A DNA stretch of 63,981 bases, counting the filler, from Octopus bimaculoides (taxonomy: Eukaryota), in assembly GCF_001194135.2 (NCBI RefSeq). It is 6 parts of 6 records of this genome, joined end to end, with 100 filler letters (N's around TTAATTAATTAA, not from the genome) between each part and the next. Parts side by side here need not be neighbours in the genome. Positions count along the whole stretch, not along the records: positions 44,927 to 61,461 come from NC_068988.1; 5 more parts are not named here. One strand, 5' to 3'. Under the pieces are notes generated by a model. The model saw nothing but the letters and a program-made list of their open reading frames with translations. It ran no database searches and was not told where the DNA came from. A program made the translations under genes and the position numbers. Position 1 is the stretch's first letter; the number at the start of each line of letters is the position of its first letter. Positions 46,151 through 46,480 of this stretch are shown piece after piece.

Positions 46151-46480
46151 GGTACAGAACGTTACCGACGGTGCAAATAAGACACACACAAGAGATTCAT
46201 ACAAGACGTGGACAATAATTACAGGACGAAAGCGAGTGAAATACGTAAACAACGAGAAAGAAATGGAAAACTGGACAAGTTAACACAGAAAAGGACCCTT
46301 CATCAGTTGTCGGCTGTCTATCTACTCCTCATTTCGAGCATTCAAACGACAATATGAGTCTTCAAAGACAGTAAATTCTAAAATAAATTCTGAAATAAAA
46401 TTTTGGGTTTATGGAGGGTCAAAGTTGGAAACAAAAAAAAATAACAGGAGACATACAAGGAAACCGAACGTATATAAACA
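46151..46480 (-). mobile_element. Non-autonomous repeat family F (copy 1)
   Basis: Homologous to 26381-26700, with the same terminus and hammerhead-like core. Confidence 0.6.
46295..46358 (-). ncRNA. Candidate non-circularly permuted hammerhead ribozyme (copy F1)
   Basis: Minus strand reads CUCAU-A-UUGUCG-uuug-AAUGCUC-GAAA-UGAG-(15 nt)-CGACAA-CUGAUGA-A-GGGU. Stem III is AUGAG/CUCAU, the cleavage triplet is AUA, stem I is UUGUCG/CGACAA, stem II is GGGU/GCUC. Pairings were deduced by eye; activity is untested. Confidence 0.7.

What the first reader, a model, noticed from the sequence alone, without database searches (positions are those of the whole stretch)
46295..46358. Hammerhead ribozyme core with scrambled (non-circularly permuted) strand order
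Seen: on the minus strand every hammerhead element is present and in register. GAAA-UGAG pairs with CUCAU (stem III), directly followed by A (AUA triplet) and UUGUCG. UUGUCG pairs with the CGACAA lying immediately before a canonical CUGAUGA (stem I, extendable by UUG/CAG past one mismatch). GGGU after the core can pair with GCUC before GAAA (stem II). Established: types I, II and III all keep the circular order [16-17-stem I] > [core] > [GAAA]. Here the order is [16-17-stem I] > [GAAA] > [core], so all three helices cross. Inference: this can fold as a monomeric triple pseudoknot, because stems I and II lie side by side in the active fold (near-zero linker) and a 12-15 nt linker can span stem III to stem I; alternatively it could work in tandem or dimeric transcripts. 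I recall that natural non-circular hammerhead permutations have been reported, so novelty of the class needs checking; carriage by a dispersed animal repeat may be undescribed.
Basis: partly seen in the sequence, partly recalled or inferred. Interest (0 to 1): 0.92.

Follow-up and report, generated by a model that had tools for sequence, protein, structure and literature searches.

The report
Chance hammerhead-like motif, permuted order
The sequence does carry every hammerhead-ribozyme element in the already published "type SGC" scrambled order, but it is a single, unconserved, weakly paired copy in repeat-rich non-coding DNA and is most likely a chance look-alike, not a working ribozyme.

Summary
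On the minus strand, 46358→46295 reads CUCAU-A-UUGUCG-(7 nt)-GCUC-GAAA-UGAG-(15 nt)-CGACAA-CUGAUGA-A-GGGU. The order, cleavage block then GAAA block then CUGAUGA block, is not a new topology. It is the "type SGC" non-circular permutation found and validated by Eckert et al. (NAR 2023, PMC10085705).

This copy lacks what the published members share:
- Stem II is 4 bp with two G·U pairs (−1.5 kcal/mol).
- The I–II linker is 7 nt, against 3 or fewer.
- The essential fourth helix is only ACAG/CUGU, and it is not adjacent to stems I and II.
- The inserted base after the core is A, not U.

An ordinary nested hairpin (−14.4 kcal/mol) ties up part of the core. A covariance model built from 26 published members scores the site 9.8 bits (E≈0.4). 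No Rfam hit, second copy or homologue was found, and the site lies outside the nearby SINE-like repeat.

Simulation puts equally good chance constellations at about 0.004–0.01 per Mb. That is rare per window but gives roughly 10–25 per 2.5-Gb genome.

Verdict: probably fortuitous. About 0.06 that it is a genuine ribozyme under selection.

The parts
46354..46358 (-). Stem III 3' strand CUCAU (U16.1 = 46354)
   Evidence: sequence. It pairs with AUGAG at 46332-46328, 5 Watson-Crick bp. Duplex energy is -3.1 kcal/mol.
46353..46353 (-). H17 = A (AUA triplet); predicted scissile bond between 46353 and 46352
   Evidence: by analogy with hammerhead numbering. No cleavage was tested.
46347..46352 (-). 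Stem I 5' strand UUGUCG
   Evidence: Pairs with CGACAA at 46312-46307, 6 Watson-Crick bp. Energy is -5.5 kcal/mol, or -7.0 with the UUG/CAG extension.
46340..46346 (-). 7-nt linker UUUGAAU between stem I and stem II strands
   Evidence: Published type-SGC sequences have a linker of 3 nt or fewer in 28 of the 29 parsed.
46336..46339 (-). Stem II 3' strand GCUC
   Evidence: Pairs with GGGU at 46298-46295 as G-C, G·U, G-C, U·G. Energy is -1.5 kcal/mol.
46332..46335 (-). Conserved GAAA (G12 A13 A14 A15.1)
46328..46331 (-). Stem III 5' strand UGAG (continues from A15.1)
46313..46327 (-). 15-nt linker GAGUAGAUAGACAGC; holds ACAG (46317-46314), the only candidate for the 5' strand of the helix that joins stems I and II
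   Evidence: The covariance-model alignment marks two of the six pairs of that helix as non-standard.
46307..46312 (-). Stem I 3' strand CGACAA
46300..46306 (-). Conserved core CUGAUGA (C3-A9)
   Evidence: The only CTGATGA in the window; 2.5 are expected by chance.
46299..46299 (-). Extra A between A9 and stem II
   Evidence: All 29 parsed published type-SGC sequences also have one inserted base here, but it is always U.
46295..46298 (-). Stem II 5' strand GGGU
46285..46288 (-). CUGU, possible 3' strand of a vestigial fourth helix with ACAG
   Evidence: 4 bp, -1.8 kcal/mol, separated from stem II by 6 nt. A pairing this weak is expected by chance.
46300..46357 (-). Competing ordinary hairpin: UCAU/AUGA (uses part of the core), stem I plus its extension, and an inner UGCUC/GAGUA stem
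   Evidence: Minimum-free-energy fold of -14.4 kcal/mol, z = -1.5; 17 of 200 shuffles fold at least as well.

Best explanation
This is a fortuitous hammerhead-like constellation in unique, non-coding, microsatellite-flanked eukaryotic (animal-like) DNA. A short imperfect inverted repeat (UCAU-A-UUGUCGUUUG ... CAGCCGACAA-CUG-AUGA) supplies stem I and puts CUGAUGA opposite UCAU. A GAAAUGAG in the loop of that hairpin then completes the pattern in the S>G>C order. The RNA, if it is made at all, would mostly adopt the ordinary nested hairpin. The pseudoknotted hammerhead fold would be a minor conformer, because stem II is very weak and nothing holds stems I and II together. It is not a ribozyme under selection. 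Weak site-specific cleavage in vitro at high Mg2+ cannot be excluded; I put it at roughly one chance in four to five. That would resemble the lone GCS-1 sequence of Eckert et al., which cleaves but whose biological significance they call unclear.

Shown here: the sequence, the helices, their energies, the competing fold, the null rates and the lack of copies. Inferred: no function.
For: 1. Anatomy compared with real members. In 29 parsed published type-SGC sequences, stem II is 5-6 bp in 27, with at least 3 G-C pairs and at most one G·U in all 29. The I-II linker is 3 nt or fewer in 28 of them, and the inserted base is always U. On my alignment of 26 of them, 90% of cells pair, and stems II, III and the fourth helix covary. 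The candidate has a 4-bp stem II with two G·U pairs (-1.5 against -7.1 kcal/mol in SGC-1), a 7-nt linker, an inserted A, and only a non-adjacent 4-bp ACAG/CUGU in place of the fourth helix. In SGC-3, disrupting that helix or any of the three stems nearly abolishes cleavage.
2. The nested fold of -14.4 kcal/mol pairs AUGA of the core with UCAU. The three hammerhead helices sum to only -10.1 kcal/mol before any pseudoknot penalty.
3. Covariance model R1, built from published members, scores the site 9.8 bits with E = 0.42. The next unrelated hit scores 8.3 bits.
4. No Rfam family matches at the gathering score or at E up to 10.
5. It is a single copy. No paralogue lies in the 16.5-kb piece, and the site is outside the SINE-like repeat. 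There are no matches in the metagenome, viral or prokaryote-genome scans. The overlapping reading frame has no relative among 1.84 billion representative proteins.
6. Null rate. Constellations with equal or better summed helix energy occur at 0.0037-0.0097 per Mb, about 9-24 per 2.5-Gb genome. Those with stems of at least 6/5/4 bp (G·U allowed) occur at 0.012 per Mb.
7. Eckert et al. searched all RefSeq sequences with type-SGC descriptors and kept only candidates with covariation. The sections I read report no member from an animal genome.
Against: - The match to the core is perfect: 11 of 11 conserved bases, the A15.1-U16.1 pair, and H17 not G.
- Stems I (6 bp) and III (5 bp) are all Watson-Crick and the whole motif spans only 64 nt. 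Under the strictest tailor-made criteria the null gives about 1 hit per 2.5 Gb, or about 0.1 with a span of 80 nt or less. For a single 61.5-kb window the coincidence is therefore improbable, at about 10^-4.
- The one-base insertion after CUGAUGA sits at the same position as in every published type-SGC sequence.
- R1 ranks this site first in the piece, with a full-length alignment in the right order.
- The absence of homologues is weak evidence, because none of the searchable collections holds animal non-coding DNA.
Confidence: 0.8

Rival explanations
1. This is a genuine type-SGC hammerhead ribozyme maintained by selection in an animal genome. It would fold as the pseudoknotted monomer and cleave its minus-strand transcript between 46353 and 46352, for example to process an intronic or non-coding RNA.
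For: - The core is perfect, stems I and III are perfect, and the 64-nt size is close to that of published members (60-104 nt).
- The block order is that of the best-validated permutation.
- The one-base insertion after the core is at the same position as in published members.
- It is the top hit of R1 in the piece.
- The per-window chance probability is about 10^-4.
Against: - Stem II is weak, the linker is long and the fourth helix is missing.
- A stronger competing fold exists.
- The covariance-model E-value is 0.42.
- No homologue or second copy was found.
- There is no partner ribozyme or circular-RNA context of the kind known members have.
- Chance hits of this quality are expected several times per large genome, whereas no animal type-SGC member is on record.
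Confidence: 0.06
2. This is a decayed relic of a formerly active ribozyme-bearing mobile element, such as a retrozyme-, SINE- or Penelope-like repeat. Mutations since insertion would have weakened stem II and erased the fourth helix.
For: Animal hammerheads typically ride on repeats (established knowledge: Penelope-like elements, retrozymes, satellite DNAs; titles). The piece is crowded with repeats. Decay would explain good stems I and III alongside a poor stem II.
Against: - The 320-nt block around the motif matches nothing else in the piece, and the neighbouring repeat family does not extend over it.
- No reverse-transcriptase, GIY-YIG or other domain was found in the ten open frames tested against Pfam.
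- There are no flanking direct repeats.
- No repeat-borne hammerhead with the SGC order turned up in the literature search.
Confidence: 0.06
3. It is a trans-acting or dimeric hammerhead. Two transcripts, or two tandem units, would combine so that the blocks assemble in the canonical three-way junction without pseudoknots.
For: Three-strand hammerheads assemble in trans, and dimeric hammerheads exist in Penelope-like elements and satellites (established knowledge).
Against: There is no tandem or nearby second unit. The helices are too weak for bimolecular assembly at cellular concentrations: -1.5 to -5.5 kcal/mol each.
Confidence: 0.01

Closest known systems
Type-SGC hammerhead ribozymes (HRIMA-1 motif and type-SGC variants; Eckert, Friedrich, Weinberg & Weinberg, Nucleic Acids Res 2023, PMC10085705)
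   Same: - Identical block order: site block, then GAAA block, then CUGAnGA block.
- Identical conserved core bases.
- Stems I and III of similar length.
- One inserted base between CUGAnGA and stem II.
- Similar overall size.
- The cleavage site is predicted by the same analogy.
   Different: - Known members have a 5-6-bp, G-C-rich stem II, an I-II linker of 3 nt or fewer, an inserted U, and a covarying 4-12-bp helix that joins the far ends of stems I and II and is needed for activity.
- They come from metatranscriptome sequences, and at least one contig also carries a hairpin ribozyme on the opposite strand. The family of 583 sequences shows R-scape-supported covariation.
- The candidate has none of these. 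It scores 9.8 bits (E 0.42) with a model of the family.
GCS-1, the lone type-GCS hammerhead-like sequence of Caballeronia peredens (same paper)
   Same: A single sequence with every required element in a non-circular order and no covariation support. It shows that such lone matches can cleave in vitro (0.014 per min at 25 mM Mg2+), while the authors call its biological significance unclear.
   Different: It has a different block order (G>C>S), a bacterial host and stronger helices. It was tested experimentally, and the present locus was not.
Classic hammerheads, types I, II and III (the Rfam hammerhead families)
   Same: The same catalytic core and three helices around it.
   Different: The classic types keep the circular order S>C>G and form a plain three-way junction. 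The candidate's order makes all three helices cross. No Rfam hammerhead model matches it, even at E up to 10.
Repeat-borne animal hammerheads (Penelope-like elements, retrozymes, satellite and SINE-like repeats)
   Same: The host setting is the same: repeat-rich animal-like DNA.
   Different: Those are type I or III, multi-copy or tandem, and often act as dimers. This locus is single-copy within the piece, lies outside the local repeat family, and has no element-encoded protein nearby.

Membership tests
Type-SGC hammerhead (Eckert et al. 2023) | 5'-to-3' block order S (cleavage site) > G (GAAA) > C (CUGAnGA) | tested here: met
   The descriptor scan reports order SGC. The definition is read.
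Type-SGC hammerhead (Eckert et al. 2023) | All conserved core bases: CUGAnGA, GAAA, the A15.1-U16.1 pair, H17 not G | tested here: met
   CUGAUGA at 46306-46300, GAAA at 46335-46332, A 46332 paired with U 46354, and A at 46353.
Type-SGC hammerhead (Eckert et al. 2023) | Stems I and III directly abutting the core | tested here: met
   6 and 5 Watson-Crick bp; -5.5 and -3.1 kcal/mol.
Type-SGC hammerhead (Eckert et al. 2023) | Stable stem II: 5-6 bp in 27 of the 29 parsed published sequences, at least 3 G-C pairs in all 29, starting with G10.1-C11.1 after one inserted U | tested here: not met
   4 bp with two G·U pairs, -1.5 kcal/mol, and an inserted A. SGC-1 has -7.1 kcal/mol.
Type-SGC hammerhead (Eckert et al. 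2023) | Short linker (typically 3 nt) from the stem I 5' strand to the stem II 3' strand | tested here: not met
   7 nt. It is 3 nt only if stem I is extended through a U·C mismatch to 10 positions, which then uses up the bases that would form the fourth helix.
Type-SGC hammerhead (Eckert et al. 2023) | Helix joining the distal ends of stems I and II (needed for cleavage in SGC-3; it covaries) | tested here: not met
   The only candidate is ACAG/CUGU: 4 bp, -1.8 kcal/mol, 1 nt from stem I and 6 nt from stem II. The covariance-model alignment shows 2 non-standard pairs out of 6.
Type-SGC hammerhead (Eckert et al. 2023) | Significant similarity to a sequence-plus-structure model of the family | tested here: not met
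   R1 (26 published sequences, 71 positions) gives 9.8 bits, E = 0.42. The next hit in the piece scores 8.3 bits. The model covers the HRIMA-1 subfamily only.
Type-SGC hammerhead (Eckert et al. 2023) | Covariation in stems I-III among homologues | not testable with these tools
   No homologue could be retrieved. None of the collections holds animal non-coding DNA.
Type-SGC hammerhead (Eckert et al. 2023) | Site-specific self-cleavage that is abolished by mutating the conserved G of CUGAnGA | not testable with these tools
   This is a bench assay.
Type-SGC hammerhead (Eckert et al. 2023) | Context: metatranscriptome contigs proposed to be circular RNAs, with a hairpin ribozyme on the other strand in at least one validated case | tested here: not met
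   No ribozyme family is found anywhere in the 16.5-kb piece. The setting is genomic DNA with microsatellites, SINE-like repeats and assembly gaps.
Rfam hammerhead families (types I, II, III and their variants) | A match to a curated covariance model | tested here: not met
   No match at the gathering score and no hammerhead match at E up to 10 within 45900-46800. This is expected for a permuted order.
Repeat-borne animal hammerheads (Penelope-like elements, retrozymes, satellites) | The motif is part of a multi-copy or tandem element | tested here: not met
   There is no second copy of 46160-46480 in the piece. SINE-like homology starts at about 46690. None of the ten tested open frames has a Pfam domain. 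Genome-wide copy number could not be tested.

The most novel reading that the evidence does not exclude
The locus is a working type-SGC hammerhead. It would be the first non-circularly permuted hammerhead encoded in an animal chromosome. It would also be a pared-down variant that does without the fourth helix, relying on a longer stem I and a 7-nt tether.
Probability: 0.05. Interest if true: 0.6.

Novelty: not a real feature. Interest (0 to 1): 0.12.

Why it matters
If it were real, it would take the recently found non-circular hammerhead permutation out of environmental circular RNAs and into an animal genome, and it would show that a much more minimal version can work. As it stands, its value is cautionary. 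The hammerhead core is so small that a large genome is expected to hold several perfect-looking chance copies in each of the six block orders. Pattern matches therefore need covariation or cleavage data before they count.

Tried and rejected
- **Rfam.** The whole piece at gathering scores and 45900-46800 at E up to 10 gave no ribozyme. The mir-297-like and similar hits at 46088-46158 and 46494-46590 are (TA)n/(TATG)n microsatellite artefacts.
- **Copies inside the piece.** BLASTN with word size 7 found only microsatellite matches.
- **Exact-pattern scans for the locus** (CTCGAAATGAG N10-20 CGACAACTGATGAAGGG) in the metagenome, viral and prokaryote-genome collections returned 0 hits each.
- **Fetching real HRIMA-1 members from the metagenome collection.** A consensus pattern returned 19 loci. 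None has the three stems, so all are chance matches, and the source metatranscriptomes are evidently not in that collection. I used the published sequences from the paper's supplement instead.
- **Exact-protein look-ups** of three spurious ORFs of the piece, meant to reach the source genome or Logan contigs, found nothing on record.
- **Full HMMER search** of the 58-aa open frame across the locus against 1.84 billion representative proteins gave 0 hits. For that reason I ran no further search on the same collection.
- **Pfam** on the ten most protein-like open frames gave nothing; the only entry was one sub-threshold DUF hit. **tRNA scan** found none.
- **Rejected readings.**
  - A miRNA-like or otherwise selected hairpin: z = -1.5 for the 64 nt and +0.52 for 96 nt.
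  - A tandem or dimeric hammerhead: there is no second unit.
  - Part of the SINE-like repeat: the alignment shows the homology stops about 330 nt away.

Full report
**What is in the sequence.**

Read 5'→3' on the minus strand, 46358→46295 is:

CUCAU-A-UUGUCG-uuugaau-GCUC-GAAA-UGAG-gaguagauagacagc-CGACAA-CUGAUGA-a-GGGU.

- CUCAU pairs with AUGAG, the last A of GAAA plus UGAG. This is stem III, 5 Watson-Crick bp including A15.1-U16.1.
- The next base, A at 46353, is H17.
- UUGUCG pairs with the CGACAA that abuts CUGAUGA. This is stem I, 6 Watson-Crick bp, extendable by U·G, U-A and G-C past a U·C mismatch.
- GGGU, one base after the core, can pair with the GCUC that abuts GAAA. This is stem II, 4 bp, two of them G·U.

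A descriptor of my own allows the three blocks in any order. It finds this as the only hit on either strand of the piece. It labels the order S>G>C, with H17 at 46353, so the predicted scissile bond is 46353|46352.

**The topology is already known.**

- They split the hammerhead into blocks S (site), C (CUGAnGA) and G (GAAA). Types I, II and III are then CGS, GSC and SCG.
- Type SGC has R-scape-supported covariation and cleaves at the analogous site. Mutating the conserved core G nearly abolishes cleavage. Every helix can be broken by mutation and restored by compensatory changes.
- Types CSG and GCS were also found, on weaker evidence.
- They searched all RefSeq sequences as well as metagenomes and metatranscriptomes, and kept only candidates with convincing covariation.

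A further literature search found no later report of such a ribozyme in an animal genome. Its recollection that such permutations had been reported is also right. The class is not new.

**How this copy compares with real type-SGC ribozymes.**

I recovered the tested constructs SGC-1 and SGC-3 from the primer table. I also recovered 37 HRIMA-1 sequences from the text of Supplementary Figure 6, and 29 of them parsed cleanly with my descriptor.

| Feature | 29 published sequences | Candidate |
|---|---|---|
| Base inserted after CUGAnGA | U in all 29 | A |
| Stem II | 5-6 bp in 27; at least 3 G-C and at most one G·U in all 29 | 4 bp, two G·U |
| Stem I to stem II linker | 3 nt or fewer in 28 | 7 nt |
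| Fourth helix | directly flanks the stem I 3' strand and the stem II 5' strand | only ACAG (46317-46314) with CUGU (46288-46285), 6 nt from stem II |

I aligned 26 of the published sequences. On that alignment 90% of cells in the four helices form standard pairs, against 37-51% when the partners are slid by one to three columns. Stems II, III and the fourth helix show many double-sided changes. So my reading of the architecture is sound.

Duplex energies make the same point:

| Helix | Candidate (kcal/mol) | SGC-1 (kcal/mol) |
|---|---|---|
| Stem II | -1.5 | -7.1 |
| Fourth helix | -1.8 | -6.5 |

In SGC-3, disrupting any one of the four helices left cleavage barely visible, if visible at all.

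**Competing fold.**

The 64-nt element has an ordinary nested minimum-free-energy structure of -14.4 kcal/mol.

- UCAU pairs with the AUGA of CUGAUGA.
- Stem I and its extension are kept.
- UGCUC pairs with GAGUA.

The z-score is -1.5, and 17 of 200 shuffles fold at least as well. With flanks the z-score is +0.52. The three hammerhead helices add up to only -10.1 kcal/mol before any pseudoknot penalty. So the region is an unremarkable imperfect hairpin, and the active fold would be a minor species.

**Model-based membership test.**

A covariance model was built from the 26 published sequences, with stem III and the fourth helix as structure and everything else as sequence. It was run without filters over both strands of the piece.

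- It places 46282-46359 (minus strand) first, with a full-length alignment in the right register.
- The score is only 9.8 bits, E = 0.42.
- Unrelated sites follow at 8.3 and 6.4 bits.

Rfam has no match at curated thresholds anywhere in the piece, and no hammerhead match at E up to 10 around the site.

**Context and copies.**

- The piece is AT-rich (about 35% G+C). It is dense with (TA)n, (CA)n and (TATG)n tracts and is interrupted by four runs of N.
- No tRNA gene was found, and the ten most protein-like open frames have no Pfam domain.
- The motif sits in a 320-nt unique block between two microsatellite tracts.
- That block has no second copy in the piece.
- A SINE-like repeat of about 210 nt is present at 46690-46900, with several more copies at 54545-55700. 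Its homology stops about 330 nt from the motif.
- "Carried by a dispersed repeat" is therefore not supported, and there is no tandem unit for a dimeric mechanism.
- Attempts to find relatives elsewhere all came back empty. These were exact-pattern scans of three collections, exact-protein look-ups and a full HMMER search of the overlapping open frame.
- This is weak negative evidence, because none of those resources is expected to hold animal non-coding DNA.

**Is it more than chance?**

I planted CUGAUGA in 3.2 million random 207-nt contexts. The contexts were drawn from an order-1 Markov model of the piece, and I applied the same descriptor to each.

| Criterion | Rate per Mb | Expected per 2.5 Gb |
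|---|---|---|
| Stems at least 5/4/3 bp | 0.22 | 560 |
| Stems at least 6/5/4 bp, G·U allowed | 0.012 | about 30, roughly one ninth of them SGC order |
| Stems I and III all Watson-Crick | 0.0004 | about 1 |
| Summed helix energy equal or better, exact core | 0.0037 | about 9 |
| Summed helix energy equal or better, CUGANGA | 0.0097 | about 24 |

The energy criterion is less tailored to this one hit. Restricted to an 80-nt span, it gives about 2 hits per 2.5 Gb with the exact core.

But a large animal genome should contain a handful of equally good chance copies. The relevant comparison is between that rate and the rate of true type-SGC ribozymes in animal genomes, for which there is so far no example. 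Real DNA also holds more short inverted repeats than a Markov chain, and here an inverted repeat supplies stem I and the UCAU/AUGA complementarity.

**Verdict.**

The topology is legitimate but already described. This instance fails three of the structural hallmarks of the known class, has a better competing fold, has no detectable relatives, and sits at a quality level that chance reaches several times per genome.

| Reading | Probability |
|---|---|
| Fortuitous motif | about 0.8 |
| Selected ribozyme | about 0.06 |
| Decayed relic of a ribozyme-bearing element | about 0.06 |
| Trans-acting or dimeric arrangement | about 0.01 |

Within the fortuitous reading, I give perhaps one chance in four or five of weak cleavage in vitro at high Mg2+, as with the lone GCS-1 sequence of Eckert et al.. 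The decisive tests are a genome-wide and cross-species copy search with covariation analysis, and a simple co-transcriptional cleavage assay. Neither could be run here.

Noticed in passing
46690-46900 (+); 54545-54810, 54775-55040, 54995-55240, 55190-55440, 55440-55700; fragment 57763-57801: A SINE-like repeat family of about 210 nt (consensus ...GAGCTGGCAGAAACGTTAGCACGCC...GGGTCGATAAATTAAGTACCAG...). One isolated copy lies next to the finding. Four to five copies sit head-to-tail at about 200-230-nt spacing at 54.5-55.7 kb. ARAGORN finds no tRNA-like head.
   Followed up: partly
50835-51193, 59119-59495, 60997-61242; inverted partners 60081-60188 and 61067-61157: A second dispersed repeat family (contains ...GATCAACGGAACAGCCGGCTCGTGAAATTAACGTGCAAGTGGCTGAG...). 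It has three direct copies at 70-91% identity, plus inverted fragments (repeat finder D12, D14, D17, I21, I25).
   Followed up: no
45879-46085, 47545-47916, 54330-54339, 60786-60934: Runs of N (assembly gaps), each flanked by (TA)n or (TATG)n microsatellites. Many 'ORFs' and 'repeats' reported across them are artefacts of the Ns.
   Followed up: yes
46088-46158 and 46494-46590: Sub-threshold Rfam hits to mir-297, mir-1277, mir-3149, mir-466 and others (best 53.6 bits, against a gathering score of 90). They are self-complementary (TA)n/(TATG)n microsatellites, not miRNA genes.
   Followed up: yes
58111-58440: A long compound microsatellite, (TC)n then (CA)n then (CATA)n, of about 330 nt.
   Followed up: no
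L001-L019 (metagenome contigs): A 24-specified-base pattern taken from the HRIMA-1 consensus (ATGTT N7 CGAAA N4-34 AACATCTGANGA) returned 19 loci. None has the hammerhead stems. This shows how easily core-like strings recur by chance in large collections.
   Followed up: yes
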